Positions 3,426 through 62,141 are shown, counted from the first letter of the stretch. The stretch is DNA of 64,000 nucleotides from IMGVR_UViG_3300017528_000567:186001-250000; one strand, 5' to 3'. Numbers and translations: made by a program. The notes: generated by a model from the letters alone, not told the origin.

Positions 3426-5433
<2,008 letters not shown>

Positions 5434-5463
5434 CCCTCCGGCTACACCAGGAGGTGACCAGCC

Positions 5464-5859
5464 CTACGCGTCGGGCGATAAACCGATCTGCGGGGCAGCG
5501 CTCGCCGCTTGCTGCCGGTTGTGGCGACGCAACGCATATCCCGCTTCCCGGGTGTAAAACAAAAAAAGGTTGCGTGCGTAGTTGGCCGTATTCCGCTGGT
5601 TTCCCGCCGCCTGCGCCTCACGCCACTGCAACCAATACCCATGCGCTTTAAGGGCGAGCTTCCCCACGCGAGGCGGCACGCTGACACCACCTTGGTGTTG
5701 AGTCAGCTGCCATTGCTCGCGCCGAGACCAGGCTGCGATCCTTCTCTGTGCCAGCCGGCGTCTCGACTCGCTGGTTTCAATTGCAGCGCGCCGCTCCGTT
5801 TTTTCGATATACCAGCGGTACATTTGCGCGGCGAGAAAATGATAGCTGAGTGCTTCCAT
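5464..5859 (-). CDS. Hypothetical basic protein
   Basis: 131 aa ORF on the coding strand. Confidence 0.45.
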   Translation of the reverse strand: MEALSYHFLAAQMYRWYIEKTERRAAIETSESRRRLAQRRIAAWSRREQWQLTQHQGGVSVPPRVGKLALKAHGYWLQWREAQAAGNQRNTANYARNLFLFYTREAGYALRRHNRQQAASAAPQIGLSPDA

Positions 5860-5905
5860 AGCGGTCGTGTTCGTACGCTAACATGACCCGGAGGCCTCGC
5901 TTCGC

Positions 5906-7309
5906 TCAATCCGTGCCCTTCAAATTAGCCACGGGATAGAGCCGGCTCCGGACCGTCGCGATCCTCTCCGCCTCCAGCACCGCAAGGACTTCATCAAGGT
6001 CCTTGTAGACGTGGCCGCACTCGTCCAGCGGCGTGTGCCGATGGTTGCCGATGATGCCCTCGACCATCGTACCGCCGAAGGAGCGCTGCACATTGGCCAT
6101 CTCGTCATCGATGTACTTCTGCTTGTGCTCCAGCTTCCGCTTTGCCTCACCCCGCGCAAGCAGCCGCCCAGACCCATGGTTCACAGAGCAAGCCGACTTG
6201 TGAGCCTCGGAACCGGGGAAAAGGATTGCCGCGCCCTCGTACATCGAGCCAGGAATCAAACATGGGTGTCCCGTCGCCTCCCAAACCGTGCCCATCAGGT
6301 CCGGGTGCCCCGCGGGGAACGCACGGGTCGAGCCCTTGCGATGAACAAAGCCCTTTCTATGCGTCCCGTCCGGCAACACGAGTGTCTCCTGTTGCACCAG
6401 GTTGTGCGAGATCTCGAAATAGACCTCAAGATCCGCGTTGAAGACCTCCTGCGTTGCTTCTCTCACGCCTTCGACGATCAAGTGCCGATTGGCTACCGCA
6501 AAGTTTGCCGCCGAGTTGTGATGCGCCCAGTACTCCTGTCCGAGCGGCTCGTCCATGCGTAGCCAGGATTCTTCGCGGCGGTTCTTTGCCAACCCGCGCA
6601 GCTCCGCACCTGCATAGAAGAAGTGGTTAGCCGTCTGCCACCCGTAACCGCGTGACCCGCAATGCACCATCACCCAAACTTCGCCGGTGTCCCGGTCACA
6701 CTGCATCTCGATGAAATGGTTGCCGCCGCCGACCGAGCCCAGCTGGTCCGAGACCTTGTCGTAGGCCTTCTCGATCTTGTGAAGGTCGAGCGTGTCCGGG
6801 ATTGGGATAAATCTCCGCTCACACAGAGCCTCATCAACCCCGAGCGCCTTCGCCCCATAACGCAGGATCTCATCCGCCTTGTTCTGCGAAAAACGCTTCA
6901 TCAGCGCGGGGCGATTATGTCCCACCCCCGTCGCGACTCGCTTCTCAACTTCATCGATCCACTCGCGCCGCTTGTGCTTGCTCTTGACGGATCCAGCCGA
7001 AAGGTGCGCCTTCATGTACAGAACCCCACAAGAGATGTCGTAGCCAGACCCGCCCTGGATGACGGTATCCTCCGTCACAATCACTGACCCCACGGGCACA
7101 CCGTAGCCAACATGGCAATCGGGAAGCAGGTACGCTCCAATCACACCTTCATAAGACGCCCCATTGGCGATCTGTTGCCACACACCCTCTTCTGACGCCG
7201 CGTAGAGCTCATCAGACAGGAAAGCATGCGCCTCCGTTCGCATGGTGCCGACTCTAGGAAGGACATAATGCGCATCACCAACTTTGTAGGCCTGGTACTT
7301 GAAAGACAT
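5906..7309 (-). CDS. rtcB: RNA-splicing/repair ligase RtcB
   Basis: PDCHVGYGVPVG, GYDISCG, GGGNHFIE, HCGSRG, HRKG, PGSM, HGSGR, DE..YK motifs; start set at MSFKY. Confidence 0.95.
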   Translation of the reverse strand: MSFKYQAYKVGDAHYVLPRVGTMRTEAHAFLSDELYAASEEGVWQQIANGASYEGVIGAYLLPDCHVGYGVPVGSVIVTEDTVIQGGSGYDISCGVLYMKAHLSAGSVKSKHKRREWIDEVEKRVATGVGHNRPALMKRFSQNKADEILRYGAKALGVDEALCERRFIPIPDTLDLHKIEKAYDKVSDQLGSVGGGNHFIEMQCDRDTGEVWVMVHCGSRGYGWQTANHFFYAGAELRGLAKNRREESWLRMDEPLGQEYWAHHNSAANFAVANRHLIVEGVREATQEVFNADLEVYFEISHNLVQQETLVLPDGTHRKGFVHRKGSTRAFPAGHPDLMGTVWEATGHPCLIPGSMYEGAAILFPGSEAHKSACSVNHGSGRLLARGEAKRKLEHKQKYIDDEMANVQRSFGGTMVEGIIGNHRHTPLDECGHVYKDLDEVLAVLEAERIATVRSRLYPVANLKGTD

Positions 7310-8959: not shown

Positions 8960-9164
8960 GGCCTATGCCTCTCGTTGCCGTCTGGCTATGCACTCGAGCG
9001 ACGCGGGACTGGACGGCCCCCAAAATCGGCGCGAGCGAACAGCTGGTTTTCAGAACGTCCTCTGGCAAACCCAAACCCCAGGGGGCGCGGTCAACCAGTA
9101 CGAAAAGCCCAAAACCCAAAGGCGCGGCCTCACGTGCAGATCTCTACACCAACTCCAACAAGAG

Positions 9165-10957: not shown

Positions 10958-13327
10958 TTAGATCCGGCACTCAATCTCGCGCATCTCAACCTTGCCATCA
11001 ATCTTGGTCCCAGGAACCGGCTCGAACGTGAGAGTTTGGTCATCCAAGGTAGCGAACTCCTTGAACCAGATTTGACCTACGACCAAAACGAAGGTGGTCT
11101 GGGCAATCTTGAAGATCAAGTCACGGACCTTAGCCTTAGCGGCGTCCGCCTGAATGTCCAGCCACGCCCGAACGGTATTATTTCTGCCATTGGCCTTGAC
11201 GAGAAGCTCATCGACCTCCCTGATAGTTGGCTCCATCAAAGCCGTCGGCCCGTTGATCTTGCCCTTCGCGATCGCCGCCTGTGCTTCCTTCAGGCTTGGT
11301 AGCTTAGAGTAGCCCTTGAGCGAGACCTTGAGCTCCTTACCCATATAGAAGTCAGTGCTCTCCGCCTGGACACTCTTCGGAGCAAACCCACCGTCGGTGA
11401 TGCCTTGCTCTTTGAGCCATTGCGCCGCTTCTTCACCGTACTGCTCCTTGATGCCCTCGGAGCGCTCCTTAGGGGCCAGTTCTTTGACGTACCCGTTGTA
11501 TACTTTCTGCTCTGCTTGCGCGGCGAGCAGCTGGTACTGGAGCCCGAAGAAGTCCTTCGCGCTCACGTCCCTGACCATCTTGCGATTGATTACCGGCAGC
11601 TCGCGCAGATTCAGAGTGCCAACCGCCCCGCCCTCATACTCCCAGTTGTCAGACTCGAAAACCTGATCGAGCTTAGCCCCGAGCTTCTCGCGCAAAGCCG
11701 CATAGCTCTCCTCGGTCAGCTTGACCGTCAACCGGTCGATATTGATTAGCCCATCCTTGATCACCGTGTAGTTGCGAAAGACCTGCGTCTTAAACTCAGC
11801 GGGCACCGCGGTGGGCGTCGATGACAGGCTCGCCGGCAACCGATCACTCAAATTGACCGTTCCGGGCTTGCGAATGAGAAACGAAACGTTCGGGCGATCT
11901 TCATTGAAGGTCAATGATGACACCGGATAGCCCGTGGGCGCGGCGTCCTCCTTGAACTTCAAGGCAACCGGCTTGCTCGACGTGATCTCGGTGATGCGAG
12001 CGGTGATTGCAGCAATGCGCGAAGCCTTCTTGGTCAGGCCCATCTCCTCGGTGAGCGTGCGAATCTCTTCCTGCTCCGCGTCAGTGAGCTGGTCACTACT
12101 GTCGACGCGACCGCGGCCAATGCGGCTGTACCGGAAGCGATTGTCGTTAAGCAGTACACGATTGCCGTCATCATTGGAGAGGAGCTGCAGCAGATCCAAA
12201 ACAGTGAAGGCATCATCCGCGGGCACCCGATTGGGGTCATACCCCTTGCTGAACGCCCCCTCACCGAACGCCGCTTTCTTGGCGTGTTCCTGGAACTCCG
12301 AGTACCGCTGCTTGCCGAAGCAATTCGCAAACTCCTCAACGAGCGAGACATCACCGAGCACCTTGAGCAGCGGGTACACGATGTTGGGCTTCATCCTCAC
12401 GGCGTAGAGCGAGACGGCGGCAAAGGCTGCGCAGATGTTGTCTGCGAGCTGCGGCGTCGGCTGCGCGGCTTCATAGGCAACGCTGTCAGCAAACGCCATC
12501 GAGCTCGGGACGCCGACCTGTGCCGGGGAGACGAACCAGAAGCCCGAGAGGTTCTCGGGCACTCGAACCTTGCCGCCCTCGACCGAGTAGGTGACCAAGT
12601 CGCCGTCCTGCAGAGCAAACACAAAGCCCTGGATCGGATCGCCGTCAATCGCCACCTCGACCCGGGGCGCGCCCACCGGCCGCTTCTGCATCGTCGCCTC
12701 GAAGGTCGGCTCGTAACGATTGAAGTCCTCTGCAAAGATATGAGATCCGCCCGCCTTCTCAGCCATAGCGGCCAAGAGATTGCGGTCCGCGTAGTAACCG
12801 TACTCCACAACCGTGGTGCACTGGAAACCGTTGGCGGCTTCTTCCATCGCCTTGAGAATGCTGGCCCGGGTGCCCTGGTTGTCACAGCCATCAGATAGGA
12901 AAAGAAGGCTACTGACACTACCTGGGCGAGCCTTCGCGACGCGCTCCACAACCCTACCCGCTTCTTGAATCGGCTCCGTGAATCCCGTCAGACCGCATGG
13001 CTTGAGCCAGCGATCGATCGCGTGCTCCACGGCCTTGAGGTCCGTGAGCGTTGCTACCGGCTCCGCCTCCAAGAGGGTCCCGAATTCACCCCGACCGCTG
13101 AACCAGATCAGCGAAATCGTGTCCTGCTCCTTCAGCAGCTTGGGAAGCTTTCGCTTCAGCTGCTCGCGGATGCGCGGAAGGTCCCAGTACATCGAGCCCG
13201 AGCAATCGATGACCGCAAAGTGGTTTGTCGGGAGCTCGACTGCGACTACCGGTGCTTGGTCAGCTGCGTGCCTCTGATGAACTAAAAATAGGTCCTTGGA
13301 TATTTGGTACGAAACGGTGTTCGGCAT
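10958..13327 (-). CDS. Large vWA-domain protein (phage type)
   Basis: DCSGSM MIDAS and FLSDG in the N-terminal third; GGTGTA-N9-ATG. Confidence 0.85.
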   Translation of the reverse strand: MPNTVSYQISKDLFLVHQRHAADQAPVVAVELPTNHFAVIDCSGSMYWDLPRIREQLKRKLPKLLKEQDTISLIWFSGRGEFGTLLEAEPVATLTDLKAVEHAIDRWLKPCGLTGFTEPIQEAGRVVERVAKARPGSVSSLLFLSDGCDNQGTRASILKAMEEAANGFQCTTVVEYGYYADRNLLAAMAEKAGGSHIFAEDFNRYEPTFEATMQKRPVGAPRVEVAIDGDPIQGFVFALQDGDLVTYSVEGGKVRVPENLSGFWFVSPAQVGVPSSMAFADSVAYEAAQPTPQLADNICAAFAAVSLYAVRMKPNIVYPLLKVLGDVSLVEEFANCFGKQRYSEFQEHAKKAAFGEGAFSKGYDPNRVPADDAFTVLDLLQLLSNDDGNRVLLNDNRFRYSRIGRGRVDSSDQLTDAEQEEIRTLTEEMGLTKKASRIAAITARITEITSSKPVALKFKEDAAPTGYPVSSLTFNEDRPNVSFLIRKPGTVNLSDRLPASLSSTPTAVPAEFKTQVFRNYTVIKDGLINIDRLTVKLTEESYAALREKLGAKLDQVFESDNWEYEGGAVGTLNLRELPVINRKMVRDVSAKDFFGLQYQLLAAQAEQKVYNGYVKELAPKERSEGIKEQYGEEAAQWLKEQGITDGGFAPKSVQAESTDFYMGKELKVSLKGYSKLPSLKEAQAAIAKGKINGPTALMEPTIREVDELLVKANGRNNTVRAWLDIQADAAKAKVRDLIFKIAQTTFVLVVGQIWFKEFATLDDQTLTFEPVPGTKIDGKVEMREIECRI

Positions 13328-13355
13328 CTCCGGCCCTACACCGAGACGCCAAAAC

Positions 13356-14623: not shown

Positions 14624-15115
14624 TCACGCCCCAGGATCGGGACTTTCTTGATGGTCCATTTTGACCCCCTCCAAGAACTTCGCGAGCACCTGGGCAAAGA
14701 AATCTCGATTCATGCTCTCATTGTCGCAATGAATGAGCCCATCCTTGCCCATGTAGAAGCTGGTCTCCCCGTCCCCGACGCCGATCGCCGTCCACGAAAG
14801 CGTGAAGCCCATCTCGCCCTCGCCTGGCCTCCGCTCCTGCCCCTCCGCGCCGTTCCAAGCATCGATGAGCTTGGATTCCGTCACGACCCACTTCCCACCA
14901 AGCATCGCCTCTAGATCAGCGATCGTCTGGTGCATAGAGCTCACGTGGCCCTTATGGTAATCAGTGAGGCCGAGCATCGCCTCGACCCCCAACATGAACT
15001 CGATGATTGCGCGCTTGTTCTCCAGCATCACCCGGATCTTACTGATCAAGTCCAAGGCAGCTTCCTTGAGACGCGGGTGCGGAGTGCGCTCTGGGTCATT
15101 CCAGGTCCACGCCAT
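14624..15115 (-). CDS. Hypothetical protein
   Basis: 163 aa with AGGAGA RBS. Confidence 0.65.
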   Translation of the reverse strand: MAWTWNDPERTPHPRLKEAALDLISKIRVMLENKRAIIEFMLGVEAMLGLTDYHKGHVSSMHQTIADLEAMLGGKWVVTESKLIDAWNGAEGQERRPGEGEMGFTLSWTAIGVGDGETSFYMGKDGLIHCDNESMNRDFFAQVLAKFLEGVKMDHQESPDPGA

Positions 15116-15126
15116 GTCAATCTCTC

Positions 15127-15696
15127 CTAGGTCCTGGTTACACCAGTAGGATGGACCTCGAAGCCAATCTTACGGCCGTCCCTCAAAAACTCTTGAGCAG
15201 CGCGAGACAAGAGGGATGACACTAGAGAGATGAAAGGCAGGTGCTCCCCATCCTCGCAGGTGGCCGCCCCCGGAGCCGCGGCATCGATCACGAAGTACTC
15301 ATCCCAGACGACGCGTCCATATTGCCCATTCGCTGCCAACGCACCATGCAGACACGGGGTGCCCCTAGAGCGAGCAAAGGACTGAACGAGCTCACGTGAA
15401 GGCGCGTTGTCCAAGCAATCGACCAAGAGGTCCGCATCACCAAGCAGCTTCTGCTGATTGTACAGGGTGAGCCGGTGCGGCACTGCTACGAGCTTAACCC
15501 CAAACAAGAACTGCATGGTCTGCTGGAGAGCCGGCGCCTTGCTGCGGTCAACCTGCGTCTTGCTATGGAACTGTGACAGAGGGCTCTTCGACTTCACACG
15601 ACCATCATCGATGACTGTCAGCTCTGCGAAGTTCCGTGCGCACAAAATGAAATGGGAGCCAAGGGCTCCCACTCCGATGACCGTGACCTTTCTCAT
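15127..15696 (-). CDS. ThiF/E1-like ubiquitin-activating adenylyltransferase
   Basis: MRKVTVIGVGALG nucleotide-binding loop, DDGRV, DCLDN, candidate catalytic Cys in ATCE. Confidence 0.88.
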   Translation of the reverse strand: MRKVTVIGVGALGSHFILCARNFAELTVIDDGRVKSKSPLSQFHSKTQVDRSKAPALQQTMQFLFGVKLVAVPHRLTLYNQQKLLGDADLLVDCLDNAPSRELVQSFARSRGTPCLHGALAANGQYGRVVWDEYFVIDAAAPGAATCEDGEHLPFISLVSSLLSRAAQEFLRDGRKIGFEVHPTGVTRT

Positions 15697-16144: not shown

Positions 16145-16515
16145 AATCTAGAGAGCGTGCGCAGCTCCGACATCCATTCGGGCTCGTACATCACTGGCAC
16201 CGTGCCGTACGAAAGCTTGCCAGGCCCCGACCAAAACAACTCCACAGACTCGTCTCGGCTGGTGACCCACCACACGAGCCGCTTACCAAGAGCCGACTCA
16301 ACCGCCGCAAATGTCGTCAAATCCTCATCTGACGGTACAGGCACACCCGAACCTGGGTGACTATGCGCGAAGCCCAGCACCTCGTCTCTGTGATCCCAGA
16401 TGATGGTCCACAGGTCCCGACTATCCGGCAGCGATCCGACTGCGCGGCCCTCGGGGAGATGCCAAAAAAGGGGCTCGCTATCGAGATTGACTAGTACGCC
16501 GGCTTCGAGGCTCAT
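16141..16515 (-). CDS. JAB/MPN metallo-isopeptidase
   Basis: N-terminal EAG and HSHPGSGVPVPSDED JAMM motif. Confidence 0.88.
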   Translation of the reverse strand: MSLEAGVLVNLDSEPLFWHLPEGRAVGSLPDSRDLWTIIWDHRDEVLGFAHSHPGSGVPVPSDEDLTTFAAVESALGKRLVWWVTSRDESVELFWSGPGKLSYGTVPVMYEPEWMSELRTLSRF

Positions 16516-16538
16516 CTTCACCTATTACACCGAAATCG

Positions 16539-19796: not shown

Positions 19797-20347
19797 TCAT
19801 CGTAGAGCCCCATCCCCTTGGGGTCGGTCTCCACGTATGGCAGCTCGGGTTCCTCTTCAGGAATCTCCCCAAGCTTGAGAGCTCGGTCCCATAGGATCGT
19901 CGCCGTAGCTGTCGCGAGGTTGAGGCAATACCGGTTGCGCGTCGGGATGATCACGAAGCGATGGCAATGCCGGAGCACCGATTGCGGGATGGAGCCGTCC
20001 TCGGGGCCGAACACATAGACGGCGTTCTTCGGGTGCTCGAAGTCCTGCAGCCGCTCCGAGCTCGGACGCACCTCGACAGCCACGGGCGTGCAGTCGCGAA
20101 ACTGCTCAAGCGGACGATCGAACTGGACGATCTCCACTTCCTTGTAGCCCTTCATCCGCTCTTCACGTGGGAGCTTGCCGCGGCGCTCGACCTCCATGCG
20201 GACGCGGTCGCCTGTGTACCAGACCTGCTGGAGCCCGTAGCAGCTCGCGAGCCGCACGACCATTCCGACGTTGTAGGCGAACCGTGGATCGATGAGCGCG
20301 ATTGCCGGGGCGACGCCCGCGGGTGCAGCGTTCTTGCCGATGAGCAT
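19775..20347 (-). CDS. SpoU/TrmH-family RNA 2'-O-methyltransferase
   Basis: PRFAYNVGMVVR, YVFGPEDGSI, CLNLATA SPOUT motifs. Confidence 0.88.
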   Translation of the reverse strand: MLIGKNAAPAGVAPAIALIDPRFAYNVGMVVRLASCYGLQQVWYTGDRVRMEVERRGKLPREERMKGYKEVEIVQFDRPLEQFRDCTPVAVEVRPSSERLQDFEHPKNAVYVFGPEDGSIPQSVLRHCHRFVIIPTRNRYCLNLATATATILWDRALKLGEIPEEEPELPYVETDPKGMGLYDDCGWPGS

Positions 20348-20364
20348 GCGGCTGGTTACACCGC

Positions 20365-21276: not shown

Positions 21277-21564
21277 CTAATTCTTGCCGCCCTCTCGGAG
21301 CGACTTCATCTTCTCGAGCTCGAGCAGCGCCGCCGCAGAGACCTCCGGATTCGAAGACTCAGCCTGCAGCATCAGCAGCACGGCACACAGCGGCCACAGC
21401 TTGCGGACCTCCGCCCGTACAGCTCGGGCCTCTGCCGGCGAAGCGCTCGCCATGTACTGCTCAAACCAGTGGCTCATCTCGGGGAGCTTATGGCGGTCCG
21501 CTTCAGTGGCGTGCGCCATGAGGTGCCCGAGCTCTCTAATCTTGTCTGCGACTGCTTGGTTCAC
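21277..21564 (-). CDS. Hypothetical helical protein
   Basis: GGTGTA-N9-GTG. Confidence 0.65.
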   Translation of the reverse strand: MNQAVADKIRELGHLMAHATEADRHKLPEMSHWFEQYMASASPAEARAVRAEVRKLWPLCAVLLMLQAESSNPEVSAAALLELEKMKSLREGGKN

Positions 21565-21580
21565 AAGAGTCGCTACACCA

Positions 21581-22015: not shown

Positions 22016-22091
22016 TGGCGCTCCCGGAAGGAATCGAACCCTCGCGGTCCCGAGGTAGAAACTCGGCGCTCTTCCTCTGAGCTACGGGAGC
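22016..22091 (-). tRNA. tRNA-Arg(TCT)
   Basis: Loop TTTCTAC, CCA. Confidence 0.9.
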
Positions 22092-22106
22092 ATGGTGTCA
22101 GTACAC

Positions 22107-22180
22107 CGGAGGCGCGGGCCGGAATCGAACCGACGTAGGCTGGGTTGCAACCAGCTGCCTAACCATTCGACCACCGCGCC
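22107..22180 (-). tRNA. tRNA-Cys(GCA)
   Basis: Loop TTGCAAC, U73. Confidence 0.9.
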
Positions 22181-24497: not shown

Positions 24498-24670
24498 ATT
24501 TTGAGCAGGTTGGTCGCGACATTACTAACCGCGGCCCGCCATGCTTCCTGAATCCTAGGCGTGAGCTCCTCCCACTTCGGCATGGGCAGCCCCGCATAGT
24601 TTTTGAAACCAGTGACCTCCCCATAGGCGTTGTATGCGCTCATAGCGAAGGCCTCAACATCGTATAGCAT
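24488..24670 (-). CDS. Small phage protein (MPKWEELTPRIQEAW)
   Basis: GGTGTA-N9-ATG. Confidence 0.65.
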   Translation of the reverse strand: MLYDVEAFAMSAYNAYGEVTGFKNYAGLPMPKWEELTPRIQEAWRAAVSNVATNLLKMRT

Positions 24671-24685
24671 CCCGATCCCTACACC

Positions 24686-26049: not shown

Positions 26050-26081
26050 CCGCTTTCGTACACCGAGGGGACGCGATCGAA

Positions 26082-40031: not shown

Positions 40032-40173
40032 CGGTCGTCCTTTGGACCTTGGTACACCGAGAACTCCCGCCGTCCCATGCCGGCCGCGGCGGAAACCAAA
40101 ATATGCGGTTGCCTACTGATTTGTTCGGGCCGCACCCGGCACTCTCGGGCCTATCTCTCACGTAGGTGGTTCT

Positions 40174-40991: not shown

Positions 40992-41067
40992 GGATGCGAA
41001 CCCCTGGAGTCGAACCAGGTTTCTCCGGCTTATGAGGCCGGCGGATTGCCGTCTTCCCCGGCCGCCA
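40992..41067 (-). tRNA. tRNA-Met(CAT), irregular acceptor
   Basis: CCGGC-CTCATAA-GCCGG, canonical T arm. Confidence 0.72.
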
Positions 41068-41094
41068 TGTAGAGAACTTACACCAAAAGAAAAT

Positions 41095-42008: not shown

Positions 42009-42024
42009 TGAACCGGGCCTCTCC

Positions 42025-42103
42025 CCGGTAGGTCACGCCTGATTCGGTCGACTGGCTTTGTGCCAAGTGGCAGTGGCGTTCCTTCGTGCGGCGCTACACC
42101 GCG
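42025..42103 (-). repeat. About 80-nt promoter/leader repeat, copy 1 (copy 2 at 43146..43224)
   Basis: CCGCGGTGTAG.GCCGCAC.AAGGAACGC.ACTGCCACT...GTCGACCGAATCAGGCGTGACCTACCGGGGA. Confidence 0.85.
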
Positions 42104-42107
42104 GCGC

Positions 42108-43143: not shown

Positions 43144-43145
43144 TC

Positions 43146-43224
43146 CCCGGTAGGTCACGCCTGATTCGGTCGACCGGCCGATGGCCAGTGGCAGTTGCGT
43201 TCCTTTGTGCGGCTCTACACCGCG
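43146..43224 (-). repeat. About 80-nt promoter/leader repeat, copy 2
   Basis: Near-identical to 42025..42103. Confidence 0.85.
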
Positions 43225-43347
43225 GCGACGAAAGGTTGTGCCGCCAAGAGCTTGCGCGCGGACACATTATGGCGGTAACTTGAGAGCTTGCGCGCAGGGC
43301 CAGTTCGGCGGTAACGTTCAGGGCATTGCGCTTGGAGGAGCGTAACC

Positions 43348-48552: not shown

Positions 48553-49225
48553 CGTCCGACACAGCTTCTTCTTTTGAAGGGACCGCCTCGCTTACAGCTG
48601 GAGGTGCCTCCGATCCCCACGTGTCCCAGCCGGGCCACGCCTCCCTCGCGAAGAGCTCGATGCGGGGCCTGTCGCCCAGGAGCTCGACGATCAAGTCGCG
48701 GAAGATGGCGGGCTTGCGCGAGTGCACCTGCTGCTTGGGCGCCAGCACGTAATCGACCGGCCACTCTGGCGGCAGCACCTCATAACCATCGTGGTCGAGC
48801 TCAAACACATGCTGGACCTGGCTCTCACTGAGCAGCGGGAACACACGCTCATTCGGATGCGTCGAGAAGACCAGCAGCAGCTCATCGAGCGGCTTTACGA
48901 ATCGGGGCCGTGGGCCGCTTGCCCTGATGGGCGTGCCGTCCTTCGTGGTCTTCACCCAGATGTACGCGATGCCCTGGTAGTGCAGACCGTGCCGCTCACG
49001 CCATTGCTCGCCGCAACGCATCGCAAGGGCGAGCTTTGGACCCGTGACCCACGAAAAGACAGCGCAGCGTTTGGCCATGAACCGAGACCAATCGAACGCT
49101 GCGATCTCGAGCTCCGGCATTTGCTCGTACGTGAGCTTGGCAGTGCCGAATGACGTGTACGGCCACGGGAAGTCCGCGTAGATGATCTCGTACGGGCCGC
49201 TCTTTTCTGCGGCTGCGGCTGACAT
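48497..49225 (-). CDS. MT-A70-family adenine methyltransferase
   Basis: IIYADFPWPY, IWVK, HSRKP, RIELFAR, GWDTWG; GGTGTA-N9-ATG. Confidence 0.9.
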   Translation of the reverse strand: MSAAAAEKSGPYEIIYADFPWPYTSFGTAKLTYEQMPELEIAAFDWSRFMAKRCAVFSWVTGPKLALAMRCGEQWRERHGLHYQGIAYIWVKTTKDGTPIRASGPRPRFVKPLDELLLVFSTHPNERVFPLLSESQVQHVFELDHDGYEVLPPEWPVDYVLAPKQQVHSRKPAIFRDLIVELLGDRPRIELFAREAWPGWDTWGSEAPPAVSEAVPSKEEAVSDDDLDLFLRWQWYRHGPRD

Positions 49226-49295
49226 GTCATCGGCTACACCAAGGGGTTGGCGCGCCGTTCGACGGAACCACCCATTTGTGCTATCCTTACCTGTA

Positions 49296-49883: not shown

Positions 49884-51482
49884 TCATAGCCCCGCGAGCT
49901 CCTCAAAGAGGTCGGGCTCACGAGTCGTGCGAAGCACCGCAACCTGATGCGACTCCGGGTCGCGCTCGATGCCAATGAACCGGCAGCCCTCCTCGAGCGC
50001 CGCCAAGCATGTGGTGCCGCTTCCGCAATACGGGTCCAGGACCGTGCCGCCCTTGGGCGTGACGAGCCTGACCAGCCAACGCATCACAGCGAGCGGCTTC
50101 ACCGTCGGGTGCTTGTTGGTCCCCTTCGGCAGCCCGCGATCGCGCTCGGCCTTGCTGACCTTGGCTGAATAGAAGAACGGGGCGTCGGGCTCGAACTGTC
50201 CGAAGAAGCGAGAGGCACCTCCGGTATCGCCGAAGCCACCCGCAGTTGCCACGGGATTCGAACCACTGAAGCCGCCTTCATATGAGACAGCTCCAGCGAA
50301 TTTACCTCCGCTCTTCCCACCCAGCGATGTCGACACCCCACTCTGCTCATCCAGGGTCTTTACGGGGCAACCGTCAGCGCATTCGTAGACAGGTACTTCA
50401 GCGGCGTCGGTTTCAAACTGGCTGAAGAAGCGGGAGGCCCCTCCAGCATCCGAGTAGCCTTGCGACGTCCGCGCGTATTCTCGGCCCTTGGCTACGTTTG
50501 TCTCGCACGCCGAGTTGTTTCGAATCCCCGGAGCCCCACCCGCCGGCCCACTCTGCGCATCCAGAGTCTTGACCGGACACCCGACTTCGCATTCATAGAC
50601 AGGCACCTCCTCCATGCCGTCCGCGTCGCCCGTCTGCTCCGACGTGTAGGCGTGGCCGGCACCCTCACCGAAGGGCTTCATCCCGTCGTCGAAACGGTTG
50701 ATGACGGGCGCTGGCAAACGCTTGGTCCCGGTGATTTTGCAATCGGCTGCGTGAGTAAGCAGGAGGTTGGCGGGCCATCGACCGTGATTGTGAACCACGG
50801 TTTCAGTCCCTTGAGTCATGCCGCCAGTCTGCTTCGACCCCGGCCCACTAGTGCGCTCCGCTCTAGGTTTTGAGCTATTGGTGCGGGTCTGGACACCAAC
50901 GCGACAAGCATCGATGTTCATCGCCCCAGTGTCAGTCGCGAGCACTTGCTTGGCGACCGTCGACTCAGCGAGCGGCTTACGAAAAATCAGCGCCGGCTCC
51001 CAACTAGGCTTGAGCGCCGTGGCCCAGCCCTCCCAAGAGGAAGCTTCCTCAGCACTGAGCCCAGCCTTCTCAAGTGCTTTTTGAACAGATAGCGCTTTGG
51101 GAAAACCAGACCCGTTCAACCACTGAAAACACTGGACCCCGAACTGACTCGCGATCGTGTCGCGACACTCGAAACCCGCAGCGCGGATCCCGATCGAGAT
51201 CAGATCGAAAGTACGCGTTCCGCCGAATGAGACCAGGTGCCCACCAGGCTTCAGAACACGGAGGCACTCACGCCAAACCGAGATCGGCGGGATGCTCCAA
51301 TCACGACCCATGAAGTCGCCCGACGTATCGAGCTCCCCGCCCTGCAGGTACGCGATGATCTCGTCCGCGGTCGGCTCTCTCGTGCCTAGCCCATAGGGCG
51401 GGTCGGTCACGACCGAGTGCACCGACTCATCCGGCAACGTCTTAAGAACGTCCAGGCAGTCGCCAAGCAGGATCTGGTTCAC
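49884..51482 (-). CDS. DNA N4/N6 methyltransferase (beta class)
   Basis: VTDPPY, HPTVKP, VLDPYCGSGTT. Confidence 0.92.
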   Translation of the reverse strand: MNQILLGDCLDVLKTLPDESVHSVVTDPPYGLGTREPTADEIIAYLQGGELDTSGDFMGRDWSIPPISVWRECLRVLKPGGHLVSFGGTRTFDLISIGIRAAGFECRDTIASQFGVQCFQWLNGSGFPKALSVQKALEKAGLSAEEASSWEGWATALKPSWEPALIFRKPLAESTVAKQVLATDTGAMNIDACRVGVQTRTNSSKPRAERTSGPGSKQTGGMTQGTETVVHNHGRWPANLLLTHAADCKITGTKRLPAPVINRFDDGMKPFGEGAGHAYTSEQTGDADGMEEVPVYECEVGCPVKTLDAQSGPAGGAPGIRNNSACETNVAKGREYARTSQGYSDAGGASRFFSQFETDAAEVPVYECADGCPVKTLDEQSGVSTSLGGKSGGKFAGAVSYEGGFSGSNPVATAGGFGDTGGASRFFGQFEPDAPFFYSAKVSKAERDRGLPKGTNKHPTVKPLAVMRWLVRLVTPKGGTVLDPYCGSGTTCLAALEEGCRFIGIERDPESHQVAVLRTTREPDLFEELAGL

Positions 51483-51490
51483 CCGTGGGG

Positions 51491-53281
51491 CTACACCACT
51501 GCCACAAGGAAGCGGTGCGCGACGCGCTCAACCACGTTACCCCGGCGATGAGCGCCCGGCTTGGACAACACCGACCGGAACGATTCCATCTGGTCTCGCG
51601 TGATGTCGTAGTTCAGCACGTAGTGCGCGAACACTTCGGCGAAGGCTTCATCGATGTCGCTCTTCCCGTAGTCAGACACTGCCTCAACCGGCGCTGGGTT
51701 GTCGAAGTAACTTTGCTGCCAAGCCTTGGACTTGGGGTCAAGTTTAGCTTCCGCTTCCGCGTTGTGGACCTTGAGCGCGAGGTCAAGGGTCGCCATGGCA
51801 TTATCGACCAACTGCTTGAGCAGAACTCTCGCGGTAGTGACCCACTGATCTCGTTGCGCGGGCCTCACCTTGGAGAGGTCGTCGGCATGCCACCTGACGC
51901 TGACCCCCTCGCTCCAGGTGGCTCTATTCAACTTCTCAACATCCGGGTTCTTGAAGGCGTCGCGCAAGCCGCGGACCCCAGACAGAGCGTCGGTTATGTC
52001 CGACGAAAGATCTCGAATCTGTTTCCTGTGCCCATCTTCCTCCTCGGGAGTCGAGACACCTGTCGCTACTGCAGAGACCAGCGCTAGAATAGCACGCTCT
52101 GCAGTCCGTATCAGGTACTTGGGCTTACTGAGATGGTTCTCGCTGTAGAGCGCGACGTCCTTCGGAGCGTTGGCGGGCCGTGGAACAGTTCGAGCTTTCA
52201 CCAACTCGGAGAACCGATGGCGCTGCTCGGGCCGCATCTGCTTGAACCAGTAGCGGTGACCAAGTTCGTGTACAACCAGCTCAACAATGAACGTGCTCGG
52301 CCGAGAGTAGATCCGGACCGTGTCCGGACCAATGAAGTAATGGCCTCCAACGCCGCCACCCGTGTTCTGGTTCGCACCGCCGCAATCATTGCACTTGATG
52401 AACGTGGTCCCGTACCACGCGCTCTCCAGACCTCGGATCTTGAGCCGTGCGTGTGCCTCCCTCAGGTAGCCGATATATTCGCGGACCTCTTTGTCGATGA
52501 CGGTCGAGTCGTCCACCACGATCTTCATGCCGAGCAGGTCGAAGTTCCGATACGCGGTTGTCAGCCCTTGCCCGTAGTTCTCCTCGAAGATCTCGCGCGT
52601 CTTCTCGAACCACTCCAGCGGGCTCCAGTCGAGCTTGCTCTTCTTCGCAGCCTTGCCGGCCGCGGCATAGAAACCGACCCGCGTGAGAAACTCCCACTTG
52701 ACGCGCCACTCACTGTCAGAGTCACCCATGATGGACGCGATCTCAACGGGCGTCGCCTTCTTGACGGTCTTCTGCGCAAGCTTATCAAGGACGGTCTGAT
52801 CGACAGTCCACTCATACTTGATGAGGTCCGCAATGGTCGGGCAAGCCTTCTCCATTCTCGACGTGACCTCAGACCACCCAAACTGTTTCAAGGATCGGAC
52901 AGGGTCCCGCTGCTCGTCAGAGCCGTAGTACTGCGACGACAGCTCACCCTGTCTTCTGTGCTTGGCCGCCACCGCCTCAAGATACTCTATGGCAAAGTCG
53001 ACCGCTCGCTTGATCACGAGACGGGCCTGGTCGTTGCTAATCATGGCATCGAACTCGGACTGAAACTTCCTGAAGTACGAGACCAGCCGATCTTCGATGA
53101 CCCACCCCCAAGCCCGAGCGCTCTCGTGATGTGGGGTCTTCAAGAGTGCCTTCAGCTCGGCCAGCTTGGTCGCAAACCATTTCTTGGGCACAACCTCATC
53201 GGCCGCCAAACGGAAGCGCTCTGCCACCCGGAGAGCAGGACTATCAGCTACGTGAATCAGGCTCGACGATGACCGCGCCAT
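51491..53281 (-). CDS. Large protein with HExxH and EAFAE metallopeptidase-like motifs, probably virion-associated
   Basis: VHELGHRY, SDYGKSDIDEAFAEVF; RVAERF and RVAHRF at both ends. Confidence 0.7.
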   Translation of the reverse strand: MARSSSSLIHVADSPALRVAERFRLAADEVVPKKWFATKLAELKALLKTPHHESARAWGWVIEDRLVSYFRKFQSEFDAMISNDQARLVIKRAVDFAIEYLEAVAAKHRRQGELSSQYYGSDEQRDPVRSLKQFGWSEVTSRMEKACPTIADLIKYEWTVDQTVLDKLAQKTVKKATPVEIASIMGDSDSEWRVKWEFLTRVGFYAAAGKAAKKSKLDWSPLEWFEKTREIFEENYGQGLTTAYRNFDLLGMKIVVDDSTVIDKEVREYIGYLREAHARLKIRGLESAWYGTTFIKCNDCGGANQNTGGGVGGHYFIGPDTVRIYSRPSTFIVELVVHELGHRYWFKQMRPEQRHRFSELVKARTVPRPANAPKDVALYSENHLSKPKYLIRTAERAILALVSAVATGVSTPEEEDGHRKQIRDLSSDITDALSGVRGLRDAFKNPDVEKLNRATWSEGVSVRWHADDLSKVRPAQRDQWVTTARVLLKQLVDNAMATLDLALKVHNAEAEAKLDPKSKAWQQSYFDNPAPVEAVSDYGKSDIDEAFAEVFAHYVLNYDITRDQMESFRSVLSKPGAHRRGNVVERVAHRFLVAVV

Positions 53282-55112: not shown

Positions 55113-55890
55113 AGCTTTCTCTAAGAACGTCGATTGACTCAGCTCAGCTGACTCAAACTCGGGCGAATCGGTCTCTGGGAAACATCTCTACGAAGTCGAG
55201 TGAAGTGTGTCAACGAAGACCTGAACGAAGTGGATCACTCGTGTGACCAAAAGGATGACTGTGAATGTTTTGTGTTTAGCGGGAGGGAGCAGGTGAACTC
55301 ATTGAAGCTGTTTCTCTCGGTGTCGGATGATTTGGTTGAGTCGATTGTGTCGGTTGATTTGAAGGAGTAGCGGGAGCCGGTCTTCTTATCGTGAGTTGAG
55401 AACGCGTTGCTTCTTGAGCTGGTTGATTTGGTTGAAGTAAATCATGGGTTGATGGAGGAGTTGAAAGAGAGGTAGTTCTGAGATGAGCGGTGGGACTGGG
55501 ATTTTGAGTAACTCCAACTTCAGCTAACCCTAGAGTGGAAAAGAACTAAAGATCTCTTCTGTCTAAGGGGAAAGTCTTATCTCTTAGGGATACGTTCAGA
55601 CTCTCTCAGCCTACTTAGCTGGGATACCCTGTCTCTGGGGAAGAACGATCCCCTGGGTACCCATAACCATCGAACACCTTGTAGTGCTTATCTACTCTGG
55701 CGGTGTTCGAAGCATCCGACCCTCGTAAGCGTCGGTTGGAGCAACGAGGCCTTTCCTCTCAGATCCCGAGTAAGCTCTCAGGTTGATGGGGTCACCGCGG
55801 TGACCAAGGGGCTTAGGACCTAGACCCGTGCGGCCACGGGTTATCATCCCCGTACACCGTGGGGCGGCGCCCTGGTGTACTAATTCGACC

Positions 55891-56187
55891 ATGACCCCTG
55901 CTTTTTTGACCCTCTCGGATGTCTTGGGAGAGCCCAAGGTACGCATGGATTTGCCACTGCTTAGGCTAGGGGACAGGCTGGAACTACGATTCAACCTTCA
56001 ACGGCGAAACTCTGGTCGGACCGAAGAACTCTGTGTGTCCGGCGAGTACAAGGTGATTTCTTTGGTAGTCGACACGACTCGAGGCGCACCGCGGCAACTC
56101 GTTCACGTGTCTGCCACCGGCGTAGCACCCGGGTGGAGGTCTATCAAGAATCCGCCACCGTCACGCTTCCCGCTTCATGGCCTCTAG
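55891..56187 (+). CDS. Hypothetical protein
   Basis: GGTGTA 11 nt before ATG. Confidence 0.55.
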   Translation: MTPAFLTLSDVLGEPKVRMDLPLLRLGDRLELRFNLQRRNSGRTEELCVSGEYKVISLVVDTTRGAPRQLVHVSATGVAPGWRSIKNPPPSRFPLHGL

Positions 56188-60481: not shown

Positions 60482-61288
60482 CTAGCGACTCCCCGCGTGC
60501 TTGAAAAAAGTTTCAACTTCTCGTGCCAAGACTGTCTCGAAATTCTCGTGGTTGGAGCGGAACACTAGCCCTTGCCTGAAGCCAACTGTTTGCACGTCTG
60601 TCTCATAATAGCTGTGTTCCTGATGGGTGCCAAAGTCACGCCCAACAGAAAAGCTATCTTTCGGGGCGAACGAGGCGAGGCTATTTTTGAGGCATGCTGT
60701 CATCAGTTGCATGTAGAATCGGCCATCAGCGATCAGAGGGCACCGCGTGCGGCGATCCAAGTAAGCCGCAAACAAGTACGCGGTTGTAGCCCACTGCTTG
60801 ACCCACTCCGGCCCGAGCTCATAGCCACATCGTTCAAGGTGCCGCGCGAGCGCCGCCGTGGGTAGACTCTGTTGCTCGTGCCACTCTTGCGTCGGCAAGA
60901 GCACGAAGCCGATCCCCTGTGGGTCAACCATTCCGGGATCTATCTTGAAGAGCTCAGGCAAGAAAATCGTGGCCAGGGATCCTTCTTCCTCTTTTTGCCA
61001 GATCGTTTGATAGTGTGCCGACCGCAAGAACTCGAAGCGATCTTCCTTACCACTGCGGTAGTATCCGTAACGTTTCTCGCAGGTTACCCGCCGCCCCGAC
61101 GTCAAATTCGCCATGAAGGCCCGGAGCTCCTGATCGGACCCGCCGAACATCGCCCAGACCGGACGCATGTTGTCAGACCCGGACGCACCGCCACTCCAGA
61201 GCAGATCGGCCTCTACCGAGGCCAGCAGGACAGCACGAAACGTGCGGCCCTTACCTTCGCTCTTGGGTTCTATCCAGACGTTGCGCAT
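60482..61288 (-). CDS. Hypothetical partner of the MTase-helicase
   Basis: Abutting gene, 268 aa. Confidence 0.7.
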   Translation of the reverse strand: MRNVWIEPKSEGKGRTFRAVLLASVEADLLWSGGASGSDNMRPVWAMFGGSDQELRAFMANLTSGRRVTCEKRYGYYRSGKEDRFEFLRSAHYQTIWQKEEEGSLATIFLPELFKIDPGMVDPQGIGFVLLPTQEWHEQQSLPTAALARHLERCGYELGPEWVKQWATTAYLFAAYLDRRTRCPLIADGRFYMQLMTACLKNSLASFAPKDSFSVGRDFGTHQEHSYYETDVQTVGFRQGLVFRSNHENFETVLAREVETFFKHAGSR

Positions 61289-61352
61289 CTACACTCCCGA
61301 CTTAGCCCGCCCTATACACGTCAGGCGTCGGGAAACTTCAAGCGCTTATGCA

Positions 61353-62096
61353 TCAAGTGCTGGTCGGCTGAAACCCGTCGTAATACACGGCTTTAGCGGG
61401 CACATGCGCAAATTCCACTCTTGGGTGGCCCGGGGTCACGATCATCGCCGTCAACTGGCCGCCGTACACGCACCCCGTGTCGATCCCATAGCAGGCCCCG
61501 CCCGCGAACCGATCGATGCGCGGCTCGGTCAACGAGTAGATCGCGTGCCCGTACACGACAGACTCCGGACCTGTCCAGCGGCTCGACCAAAAGACCGTGT
61601 CGGCGGGCTGCTCGAGACGCCCCTCTTGAAAGCCGACCATCTTACCCTCTGCATCCACGTACCGCACCCGTGCGACCGCATTGGATTGCTTGGCCACGGG
61701 GTATGCCGGCTCGAGCCCGCCGTGCACTGCGACCAGGCCCTCCCCTAAATCGAGCATCAGGGGGTTGCCGTTGAGCCACTGAAGGTCCTGGTCTGACAGG
61801 GCCAGGTTCTGCTCGGCACGTACTCCATGTATCCCCTGAACCGGATTCTTTTTGGCGCCGCGTGTTTGCTCGTGTCGACGCCAGCGGATGTGCTTGTCTT
61901 CATGATTGCCGCGCAGCACCTCGATGCCCTGCTCTTGCGCGAGACGCACACACCCCACCGGGTCTGGACCTCGGTCCATCAGGTCTCCGAGCTGCACAGC
62001 TCGATCGCGCCCGAGCTCGTACGAGACCAATGTCAACAACGCCCGGAACTCTTCCAAGCACCCGTGAACGTCGCCTATGATGATAGTACGGCCCAT
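61353..62096 (-). CDS. Calcineurin-like metallophosphoesterase (PrpA/ApaH/Pnkp-phosphatase type)
   Basis: GDVHG, GDLMDRG, GNHE, VHGG, GH, IDTGC. Confidence 0.92.
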   Translation of the reverse strand: MGRTIIIGDVHGCLEEFRALLTLVSYELGRDRAVQLGDLMDRGPDPVGCVRLAQEQGIEVLRGNHEDKHIRWRRHEQTRGAKKNPVQGIHGVRAEQNLALSDQDLQWLNGNPLMLDLGEGLVAVHGGLEPAYPVAKQSNAVARVRYVDAEGKMVGFQEGRLEQPADTVFWSSRWTGPESVVYGHAIYSLTEPRIDRFAGGACYGIDTGCVYGGQLTAMIVTPGHPRVEFAHVPAKAVYYDGFQPTST

Positions 62097-62141
62097 TTGG
62101 CCGATTACACCAAAGTCTCCTGAACGCCAGACGGTCGCCGG

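What the first reader, a model, noticed from the sequence alone, without database searches (positions are those of the whole stretch)
5433..62111. GGTGTA-N9-start motif: candidate phage promoter giving leaderless mRNAs
Seen: GGTGTA lies exactly 9 nt before start codons at 5433, 13327, 20347, 21564, 24670, 26049, 49225, 51482 and 62096, and 10-11 nt before 16515 and 55891. It also lies about 10 nt before RNA genes (22091, 37016, 41067). Most spacers lack a Shine-Dalgarno. Its presence before tRNAs argues for a promoter element rather than an RBS.
Basis: partly seen in the sequence, partly recalled or inferred. Interest (0 to 1): 0.65.

Follow-up and report, generated by a model that had tools for sequence, protein, structure and literature searches.

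The report
Huge-phage promoter making leaderless mRNAs
A strictly conserved six-base signal, GGTGTA, sits 9-10 bases in front of about one gene in ten of this giant soil phage and of many relatives; comparison between them indicates it is the phages' own minimal promoter, placed so that many messages begin at the start codon with no ribosome-binding leader.

Summary
The window is part of a 255-kb fragment of an uncultivated soil/rhizosphere giant phage. GGTGTA is the most enriched hexamer upstream of its ORFs. It tolerates essentially no mismatch. In 28 cases it lies 9 or 10 nt before an in-frame ATG/GTG with no usable Shine-Dalgarno sequence.

The same element with the same spacing is enriched in at least 14 related giant-phage genomes (300-530 kb, GC 44-65%). 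Three comparative results point to a promoter rather than a ribosome site:
- In the 411-kb relative G002, 49 copies carry a -35-like CTTGAAT exactly 17 bp upstream of the TA.
- 28 of those 49 copies do not abut a start codon, and 17 of these have an SD-like 4-mer further downstream.
- Upstream of one orthologous gene, the motif lies 9-10 nt from the ATG in some phages and 27-45 nt away, followed by an SD, in others.

The geometry puts the start codon's purine where transcription should start. No RNA data exist, so start sites remain inferred.

A very conserved phage protein with two sigma-region-4-like domains co-occurs with the motif and is a candidate reader. This is a new variant of known kinds: a phage-specific, -35-independent promoter and leaderless mRNA.

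The parts
5431..5448 (-). GGTGTA (5448-5443), 9-nt spacer, GTG 5433; 118-aa ORF. Leaderless type.
   Evidence: The spacer holds GGAGG, but it abuts the start codon.
13325..13342 (-). GGTGTA, N9, ATG 13327; 789-aa VWA protein. Leaderless type.
   Evidence: M1 aligns with M1 of the orthologues. The orthologues carry the motif at variable distance.
16513..16531 (-). GGTGTA, N10, ATG 16515; 124-aa ORF.
20345..20362 (-). GGTGTA, N9, ATG 20347; 190-aa ORF. The motif begins 2 nt after the end of tRNA-Gln.
21562..21579 (-). GGTGTA, N9, GTG 21564; 95-aa ORF. The motif begins 1 nt after tRNA-Arg.
24668..24685 (-). GGTGTA, N9, ATG 24670; 60-aa ORF. The motif begins 1 nt after tRNA-His.
26017..26064 (-). 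Two motif copies 30 nt apart (26064-26059 and 26034-26029). Each is N9 from an in-frame start of the same ORF (TTG 26049, GTG 26019).
37013..37031 (-). GGTGTA, N10, GTG 37015; 64-aa ORF.
   Evidence: No Rfam or ARAGORN hit.
49223..49240 (-). GGTGTA, N9, ATG 49225; 242-aa ORF.
51480..51497 (-). GGTGTA, N9, GTG 51482; 532-aa DNA methyltransferase.
   Evidence: The Pfam/PHROG match starts at residues 1-21.
62094..62111 (-). GGTGTA, N9, ATG 62096; 247-aa ORF.
5061..5098 (-). Leadered copy: GGTGTA, then 29 nt containing GAGGGA, then ATG 5063 of GroEL.
15113..15144 (-). Leadered copy: GGTGTA, then 23 nt containing AGGAGA, then ATG 15115 (163 aa).
40029..40058 (-). Leadered copy: GGTGTA, then 21 nt containing AAAGGA, then ATG 40031 (204 aa).
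22091..22107 (-). GGTGTA 10 nt before the 5' end of tRNA-Arg(TCT) and directly after tRNA-Cys.
41065..41084 (-). GGTGTA 13 nt before a tRNA that only Rfam detects (40995-41065, 35.6 bits).
9145..9150 (-). GGTGTA directly after a strong terminator-like hairpin with a T-run. No start codon of a long ORF lies nearby.
42022..42106 (-). Motif copy 42100 heading a conserved ~85-nt non-coding block. It is the paralogue of the block at 43144-43227.
43144..43227 (-). Motif copy 43221 heading the second copy of that block.
55853..55893 (.). Back-to-back divergent pair: the - strand copy at 55858-55853, and the + strand copy at 55874-55879 with ATG 55891 at N11.
   Evidence: Similar pairs occur in G010 and G018.

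Best explanation
GGTGTA, more fully Y-GGTGTA-(G), is the core of a promoter specific to a clade of giant phages. The TA acts as the first two bases of a -10 element. The invariant GGTG just upstream supplies the specificity that a -35 box supplies elsewhere.

Transcription starts at a purine 10-11 nt after the A of the motif. Where an ATG or GTG sits 9-10 nt after the motif, the transcript therefore begins at, or within a base or two of, the start codon. The mRNA is then leaderless and is translated without a Shine-Dalgarno sequence. This applies to 28 genes in this record, 12 of them in the window. Other copies drive short leaders that carry an ordinary SD (GroEL, the DNA polymerase, and the ORFs starting at 15115 and 40031), one tRNA, and possibly small RNAs.

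What is shown: the motif, its strictness, its spacing, its clade-wide conservation, its separability from SD sequences, and its pairing with a canonical -35 in one relative.

The best candidate factor is the conserved 208-aa protein with two sigma-region-4-like domains at G000:C1:163955-164581.
For: Strictness and spacing.

Clade conservation:
- G002 has 31 GGTGTA-N9-RTG against 4 in the control.
- Among 22-kb loci of relatives sharing 45-62% VWA identity, the spacer histogram gives N9 = 27, N10 = 29, N11 = 10, N12 = 14, against a background of about 4.
- Whole genomes, GGTGTA-N9-ATG against the backwards control: G006 22/0, G010 24/1, G014 26/1, G018 39/5, G026 23/1, G028 23/2, G025 16/0.
- The motif is absent from the more distant group with VWA identity of 38% or less.

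Promoter nature:
- G002 class I has CTTGAAT, 17 bp, then TAGTAA in 49 copies.
- Of the 28 class I copies without a start codon at N9, 25 have a purine at position 10 and 17 have an SD-like 4-mer downstream.
- The motif upstream of the VWA orthologues lies at 9-45 nt, with an SD whenever it is far.
- In G004 the variant is TG + TAAnnT, a textbook TANNNT -10, at the same N9/N10 distance (32 and 29 cases against about 9).
- Close back-to-back divergent pairs leave no room for separate upstream elements.
- Clear terminator hairpins lie directly upstream at G000 33244, G000 21656 and window 9150.

Leaderless reading:
- 20 of 23 N9 start codons open ORFs of at least 50 aa.
- 1 of 28 has a usable SD, and 22 of 28 have no alternative SD-led start.
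- M1 of the VWA protein aligns with M1 of its orthologues.
- Pooled start codons are ATG 84, GTG 27, TTG 6. A pyrimidine at -1 occurs in 74% against 56% of background (p = 9e-5).

Candidate reader:
- The protein is 73% identical between G000 and G002, where the VWA protein is 55%.
- Residues 42-105 match sigma region 4, with Z 9.5-9.7 and rmsd 1.1-2.6 A.
- A full-length close orthologue occurs in 12 of the motif-enriched genomes, with a two-piece match in two more. It was not found in G018, which is enriched (39/5) but only 65% complete.
- A diverged orthologue occurs where the motif is HTGTAA instead (G004 19/4, G008 12/1).
- The protein is absent from complete genomes that lack either motif.
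Against: - No transcript data exist. Every public run that holds this phage is DNA.
- This record has no -35 box and no conserved T at -7. That would be a poor promoter for an unaided primary sigma.
- The TG abuts the TA, one base closer than in the canonical extended -10 (TGnTATAAT).
- The terminator association is modest: 9 of 91 sites against 4% of random positions.
- The purine at position 10 sits in a purine-rich context.
- The tRNA association is not significant.
- The host is unknown, so its capacity for leaderless translation is unknown.
- The link between the protein and the motif rests on two or three subclades, so it is confounded by phylogeny.
- The record is about 54% complete.
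Confidence: 0.75

Rival explanations
1. The motif is a promoter, but it is read by a phage-encoded polymerase or a complete phage sigma factor, independently of the host primary sigma, as in phiKZ/AR9 non-virion RNAPs or T4 gp55.
For: The hexamer is invariant in phages spanning GC 44-65%, which suggests a reader that travels with the phage. Most genomes have no -35 box. Many 1000-2000-aa proteins of this record match no PHROG or Pfam family, so a very divergent RNAP could be hidden among them.
Against: Neither G000 nor the complete G002 gives a match to RNA_pol_Rpb1_2, Sigma70_r2, or the gp55 families phrog_234 and phrog_12791. The G002 class I copies have a textbook sigma-70 -35 box at 17 bp. 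The G004 variant is a textbook TANNNT.
Confidence: 0.13
2. The motif acts in RNA. It is a processing site, or a 5'-end or stability element, that creates or marks the 5' ends of mRNAs cut out of long transcripts.
For: Four copies begin 0-2 nt after a tRNA 3' end, where RNase processing takes place. Most copies sit in very short intergenic gaps, just after the stop codon of the upstream gene.
Against: A conserved -35-like box at a fixed 17 bp upstream has no role in an RNA signal. The G004 version is a -10 consensus. Some copies directly follow terminators. Divergent back-to-back pairs fit promoters.
Confidence: 0.07
3. The motif is an unconventional ribosome-binding or translation-enhancer site that replaces the Shine-Dalgarno sequence.
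For: It occupies roughly the place of an SD. Genes that have it lack an SD. GGTG is complementary to CACC of the 16S 3' end (textbook knowledge).
Against: The invariant TA cannot pair with the anti-SD. GGTG would lie 11-12 nt from the start codon, whereas true GAGGTGA elements in G004 lie at 3-5 nt. Many copies are followed by their own SD and start codon 20-45 nt away. One copy precedes a tRNA. The -35 box in G002 also argues against it.
Confidence: 0.03
4. The motif is an operator for a phage repressor or activator and only happens to lie near start codons.
For: A very conserved phage DNA-binding protein co-occurs with it. Some copies form inverted pairs.
Against: An operator alone gives no reason for a one-base-precise distance to the start codon, nor for a TA/TANNNT core with a -35 box at 17 bp. 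Most copies are single and asymmetric.
Confidence: 0.02

Closest known systems
Extended -10, -35-independent middle/late promoters of Thermus phage P23-45, used after gp39 displaces sigma region 4
   Same: A -10 element with a TG-containing extension and no -35 box. It is used by the host holoenzyme after a phage protein remodels sigma 4 and the beta flap (PMC7403470). From memory, not checked here: many of those transcripts are leaderless.
   Different: Here the TG abuts the TA, the upstream GG is invariant, and the rest of the hexamer is free. No gp39 relative was sought or found. The candidate factor is itself sigma-4-like. Nothing here has been tested biochemically.
T4 late promoters (TATAAATA) read by gp55
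   Same: A single short, very strict -10-region element without a -35 box, repeated through a large phage genome.
   Different: No gp55 homologue was found in G000 or in the complete G002. The sequence is unrelated. T4 late mRNAs have SD-bearing leaders (textbook knowledge).
Leaderless genes of Actinobacteria and Deinococcus (TANNNT about 6-7 nt before ATG/GTG), and lambda cI from PRM
   Same: A -10 element at a fixed short distance from the start codon, so that the transcription start and the start codon coincide. ATG or GTG serves as the start codon. There is no SD.
   Different: In those cases the promoter is the host's ordinary one. Here an extra invariant GGTG marks a phage-specific class that is conserved across phages of very different GC content. 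The host is unknown; a weak hint points to Myxococcota.
Promoters of the jumbo phages phiKZ and AR9
   Same: Giant phages with their own short, conserved promoter motifs close to the transcription start.
   Different: Those motifs are read by phage multisubunit RNAPs. phiKZ showed no leaderless transcript (PMC8244752), and AR9 5' UTRs are 26-491 nt long (PMC5312081). No such RNAP was detected here.

Membership tests
sigma-70-type promoter | -10 hexamer TAnnnT | tested here: inconclusive
   TA is invariant. T at the sixth position is not conserved in G000. It is conserved in the G004 variant TGTAAnnT (21 of 32), and the G002 consensus is TAGTAA.
sigma-70-type promoter | -35 box (TTGACA-like) 17 +/- 1 bp upstream of the -10 | tested here: not met
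   G000 has 0 copies with TTG at the right offset. The feature is met in the relative G002 (49 against 2) and weakly in G014 and G026.
sigma-70-type promoter | transcription starts at a purine 6-8 nt after the hexamer | not testable with these tools
   No RNA runs exist. The geometry fits: the A or G of the start codon is the 6th (N9) or 7th (N10) base after TAnnnn.
extended -10 promoter | TG at -15/-14, one base before the hexamer (TGnTAnnnT) | tested here: not met
   TG is directly adjacent to TA in every copy (GGTGTA). The register is one base off.
T4-type late promoter | a gp55-family sigma is encoded by the phage | tested here: not met
   phrog_234 and phrog_12791 find nothing in G000 or in the complete G002. 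For phrog_12791 the tool's control genomes were silent too.
Shine-Dalgarno ribosome-binding site | complementarity to the 16S 3' end at 4-10 nt from the start codon | tested here: not met
   Only GGTG can pair, and it lies 11-12 nt away. The invariant TA cannot pair. Leadered copies carry a separate SD.
leaderless mRNA | the 5' end of the transcript coincides with the start codon | not testable with these tools
   No RNA data. Indirect support: no SD, 95% of start codons begin with a purine, and a pyrimidine at -1 is enriched.
phiKZ/AR9-type phage RNAP promoter | phage-encoded multisubunit RNAP | tested here: inconclusive
   PF00623 finds nothing. Such RNAPs are very divergent, and many large ORFs here are unassigned.

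The most novel reading that the evidence does not exclude
A whole clade of 300-530-kb soil and freshwater phages runs much of its gene expression from a minimal promoter. That promoter is read by a new kind of phage specificity factor: a 208-aa protein made of two sigma-region-4-like domains. The factor recognises GGTG immediately upstream of the -10 TA and so replaces -35 recognition. Protein and motif co-vary: a close orthologue goes with GGTGTA, a diverged orthologue with HTGTAA. The promoters are fused to start codons, so a tenth or more of the genes are expressed as leaderless mRNAs. That would be a route to translation that does not depend on the host's SD usage.
Probability: 0.25. Interest if true: 0.8.

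Novelty: new variant of a known kind. Interest (0 to 1): 0.62.

Why it matters
Uncultivated giant phages are known almost only as gene lists, and nothing is known about how they are transcribed. This element gives several things.
- A way to annotate them. It fixes the true start codons of many genes and marks transcription units in at least 14 genomes.
- A concrete, testable promoter of only seven bases.
- A candidate reader protein that can be expressed and assayed without culturing the phage.

If the leaderless reading holds, this would be the first giant-phage lineage with a systematic leaderless programme. phiKZ and AR9 have none. The arrangement would suggest how phages with very different GC content and probably different hosts keep expression independent of host ribosome-binding preferences.

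Tried and rejected
- RNA evidence. The look-up of sequencing runs returned 22 DNA-only soil, rhizosphere and freshwater runs and no RNA run.
- Strain variation. Laying the contigs of four runs on 20201-26200 showed strains only about 0.3% apart. No listed difference hits a motif, but the comparison has no statistical power.
- tRNA T-loop as a -35 box. I considered this because four copies follow tRNAs. I rejected it because the distance from T-loop to TA varies (19-22 nt) with encoded CCA.
- tRNA association across the clade. Not significant.
- Scan of viral contigs with a 14-mer from the G002 promoter. Only chance single hits. A 32-nt pattern including the -35 box found only G002 and one 15-kb contig. 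So the -35-bearing class is specific to G002.
- Megablast of 10 kb against cultured phages. No match. The best protein relatives among cultured phages are about 33% identical, in Ackermannviridae and Shewanella phages.
- Full-text search for the hexamer. Only primer sequences.
- Phage RNAP, sigma region 2 and gp55. Not found.
- Large ORFs. They are mostly without PHROG or Pfam matches.
- Host. The histidine kinase gives only a weak Myxococcota hint.
- The P23-45 primary paper could not be read.
- ARAGORN with intron and tmRNA options on the two paralogous blocks at 42-43 kb. Nothing found.
Full report
WHAT THE WINDOW IS. The window is bases 186001-250000 of a 255,478-bp IMG/VR virus record (GC 58.6%, CheckV completeness about 54%). 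Nearly all genes are on the - strand. The window holds 38 tRNA genes by ARAGORN and two more by Rfam. It also encodes GroEL, three VWA proteins, two PAS/histidine-kinase/receiver hybrids, a DNA methyltransferase and a methyltransferase-helicase. Near-identical DNA occurs in soil and rhizosphere metagenomes from several studies, but no RNA run holds it. No cultured phage is close. Megablast finds nothing, and the best protein matches are about 33% identical.

THE OBSERVATION. GGTGTA occurs 34 times in the window, 30 of them on the gene strand. Dinucleotide-preserving shuffles give 13.5 +/- 3.7, and none of 100 reaches 34.

Genome-wide there are 91 copies, 71 on the - strand. The + strand copies with downstream starts lie where the genes are on the + strand. 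A start codon opening an ORF of at least 50 aa follows at spacer 9 in 20 cases and at spacer 10 in 8, against 0-4 at every other spacer. I made 224 crude gene calls from a codon-usage score and counted all hexamers in the 30 nt before the longest-ORF start. GGTGTA came first (27 genes, 22.6-fold). SD-like hexamers (TAGGAG, AAAGGA, AGGAGA) were also enriched, but at spacers 6-11. So the phage uses ordinary SD sequences for other genes.

The hexamer is strict. Among its 18 one-mismatch variants, only two single instances occur at spacer 9/10. Only 1 of the 28 motif-led starts has an SD 4-mer at a usable distance, and 22 of 28 have no alternative in-frame SD-led start within 50 codons.

The typical anatomy is: stop codon of the upstream gene, 4-10 nt, a pyrimidine-rich stretch, GGTGTA (often followed by G), 9-10 nt, then ATG or GTG.

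tRNA-Arg starts 10 nt after copy 22107. A tRNA seen only by Rfam starts 13 nt after copy 41084. Nothing is detected at 37016.

RELATIVES. The 789-aa VWA protein (10958-13327), itself motif-led, retrieved three kinds of relative. One is a near-identical 86.6-kb contig (G001). One is a complete 411,618-bp genome with terminal repeats and 44% GC (G002, 55% identity). The rest, found with an alignment of these three, are about 40 further giant-phage contigs of up to 529 kb with 45-62% identity, plus a more distant group at 38% or less.

- G002 has 31 GGTGTA-N9-RTG against 4 for the backwards control.
- In the 22-kb loci of the 45-62% group, unique GGTGTA sites give N9 = 27, N10 = 29, N11 = 10 and N12 = 14, against a background of about 4. 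A pyrimidine stands immediately before the motif in 53 of 56 sites.
- In whole genomes, GGTGTA-N9-ATG against its control gives G006 22/0, G010 24/1, G014 26/1, G018 39/5, G026 23/1, G028 23/2, G025 16/0, G012 10/0 and G022 7/0.
- Some members of the clade (G004, G008, G011, G029, G031) and all distant genomes show nothing.

The element and its spacing are therefore conserved across phages spanning 44-65% GC.

WHY IT IS A PROMOTER AND NOT A RIBOSOME SITE.

First, I fetched G002 whole. In 49 of its 226 copies, TTG lies exactly 19 nt before the motif, against a control of 2. The consensus is an A-run, CTTGAAT, a pyrimidine-rich spacer, then C-GGTGTAGTAATAG. Reading TA as the start of the -10 hexamer (TAGTAA), the -35-like TTGAAT lies exactly 17 bp upstream. 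That is the classical sigma-70 geometry.

Second, 21 of these 49 copies have ATG or GTG at N9. The other 28 do not. In those 28, position 10 after the motif is a purine in 25, and 17 carry an SD-like 4-mer further on, in several cases with an evident start codon. The motif is thus separable from translation signals.

Third, I looked upstream of the orthologous VWA gene. The motif is at N9 in G000 and G001 and at N10 in L213. In L182, L187, L188, L191, L194, L198, L208, L214 and L234 it lies 27-45 nt upstream and is followed by AAAGGA, AGGAGG or a similar SD. M1 of the G000 protein aligns with M1 of the orthologues, so the N9 ATG is the true start codon.

Fourth, the same mixture exists in the window. 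Copies at 5098 (GroEL), 15144 and 40058 are followed, after 21-29 nt that contain an SD, by the start codon.

Fifth, G004 (376,674 bp, fetched) lacks GGTGTA enrichment, but its top upstream hexamers fall into two groups. One is GAGGTGA at spacers 3-5, a true SD. The other is TGTAA(T/A/C) at spacer 8. TGTA-N9 and TGTA-N10 starts number 32 and 29 against a background of about 9. There is no preference for GG upstream, and T stands at the sixth hexamer position in 21 of 32. That reads as TG + TAAnnT, a textbook TANNNT -10.

Sixth, back-to-back divergent pairs with only 5-15 nt between the motifs occur in the window (55853-55879), in G010 and in G018. Clear terminator hairpins lie directly upstream of some copies (G000 33244, G000 21656, window 9150), although overall this enrichment is modest: 9 of 91 sites against 4% of random positions.

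Against an SD role: GGTG can pair with only CACC of the anti-SD, the invariant TA cannot pair at all, and GGTG sits 11-12 nt from the start codon.

WHERE TRANSCRIPTION SHOULD START. With TA as the first two bases of the hexamer, the first base of the start codon is the sixth (N9) or seventh (N10) base after the hexamer. That is where sigma-70 holoenzymes start. The clade-wide spread N9 = N10 > N12 > N11, with little outside 9-12, matches this tolerance. Pooled motif-led start codons are ATG 84, GTG 27 and TTG 6. The base before them is a pyrimidine in 74%, against 56% in a background of SD-preceded start codons (p = 9e-5). That background contains false starts, so this is only supportive. All of this fits initiation at the A or G of the start codon, but it is inference. 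No 5' ends could be examined.

WHO READS IT. Neither G000 nor the complete G002 matches Sigma70_r2, RNA_pol_Rpb1_2 or the gp55 families. Many very large ORFs are unassigned, so a divergent polymerase cannot be excluded.

Both genomes do encode a protein of about 210 aa with two Sigma70_r4-like segments (G000:C1:163955-164581, read as L250:1174-1800:-).
- It is 73% identical between G000 and G002, where the VWA protein is 55%.
- It has 714 homologues, all about 210 aa, many of them on contigs of 300-550 kb.
- In an AlphaFold model (pLDDT 77), residues 42-105 superpose on sigma region 4 of many sigma factors (Z 9.5-9.7, rmsd 1.1-2.6 A). Residues 106-186 form a second HTH of the LuxR / sigma-4 kind (Z 6-7). 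No full-length match exists.

Its distribution follows the motif:
- Full-length close orthologues (E below 1e-90) occur in 12 of the GGTGTA-enriched genomes, and G025 and G026 give a two-piece match. The one exception is G018, which is enriched (39/5) but gave no match. That record is only 65% complete.
- Diverged orthologues (E 1e-44 to 1e-59) occur in G004, G008, G011 and G020. There GGTGTA is not enriched, but HTGTAA-N8-ATG is: G004 19/4 and G008 12/1, against G000 2/0, G006 1/0 and G010 0/3.
- The protein is absent from the complete genomes G029, G031, G034 and G037, which have neither motif.

This is a correlation over a few subclades and is confounded by descent. It nevertheless makes the protein the obvious candidate for the factor that reads GGTG or that frees the polymerase from the need for a -35 box. 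My working model is that the host holoenzyme recognises the TA-led -10 and the phage factor supplies or replaces the upstream contact. G002 would add a real -35 box to a subset, perhaps genes expressed before the factor is made. That last point is speculation.

COMPARISON WITH KNOWN SYSTEMS. The closest analogues are four.
- The -35-independent extended -10 middle/late promoters of Thermus phage P23-45, used after gp39 displaces sigma region 4 (PMC7403470).
- T4 late promoters, which also consist of a single strict -10-region element but depend on gp55, absent here.
- The leaderless genes of Actinobacteria and Deinococcus, with TANNNT 6-7 nt before the start codon (textbook knowledge).
- The promoters of the jumbo phages phiKZ and AR9. 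These are read by phage RNAPs and give no leaderless transcripts (PMC8244752, PMC5312081).

The present element differs in four ways. Its GG is invariant. Its TG abuts the TA, one base off the canonical extended -10 register. It is conserved across a large clade of uncultivated giant phages. It is systematically fused to start codons. I found no description of it, though the literature search was limited.

VERDICT. The interpretation as a phage promoter giving leaderless mRNAs is supported by comparative evidence, though not by the tRNA argument and not yet by any transcript data. It is a new variant of known kinds. Its value is as an annotation rule, and as an entry point to the transcription of giant phages that can be tested without culturing them.

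LIMITS. The gene calls are crude and of my own making. The record is incomplete. The host is unknown; the histidine kinases give only a weak hint of Myxococcota.

Noticed in passing
window 42022-42106 and 43144-43227 (- strand): Two paralogous blocks of about 85 nt, roughly 90% alike. Each begins 6 nt before a GGTGTA copy. A 1-nt indel inside the blocks argues against coding, and neither Rfam nor ARAGORN finds anything. They may be a small RNA or a conserved 5' UTR driven by the motif.
   Followed up: partly
G000:C1:163955-164581 (outside the window; L250:1174-1800:-): A 208-aa protein with two sigma-region-4-like HTH domains. It is one of the most conserved proteins of the clade (73% identity to G002; 714 homologues of about 210 aa). 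Its presence and its divergence follow the presence and the variant of the motif.
   Followed up: partly
window 26082-28040 and 28199-31960 (- strand): Two PAS / histidine-kinase / receiver hybrid sensor proteins encoded by the phage. The best cellular relatives of the 652-aa protein (26082-28040) are in a delta-proteobacterial MAG (57% identity) and a Polyangiaceae MAG (48%). This is a weak hint that the host is a myxobacterium.
   Followed up: partly
window 20357-24685: Four motif copies begin 0-2 nt after the 3' end of a tRNA gene (tRNA-Gln, Arg, Cys, His). Promoter and tRNA are packed without any spacer. The tRNA T-loop is not at a fixed -35 distance.
   Followed up: yes
window 26017-26064: Two motif copies 30 nt apart, each 9 nt before an in-frame start (TTG 26049, GTG 26019) of the same ORF. 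They could be tandem promoters giving two protein isoforms.
   Followed up: no
window 2543-2548; G002 79921-79926: This GGTGTA lies inside a stretch conserved at the nucleotide level between G000 and G002. It looks like a Cys-rich small ORF, so the copy is probably a coding Gly-Val and not a signal.
   Followed up: partly
window 40900-40963 and 40995-41065: Two tRNA-like genes detected by Rfam but not by ARAGORN, one of them matched only to model positions 5-66.
   Followed up: no
G014 (IMGVR_UViG_3300048599_000213): A subset of its GGTGTA copies carries TTGATC at the -35 position (10 against 1 in the control). This may be a second, independent -35-bearing class in a high-GC relative.
   Followed up: no
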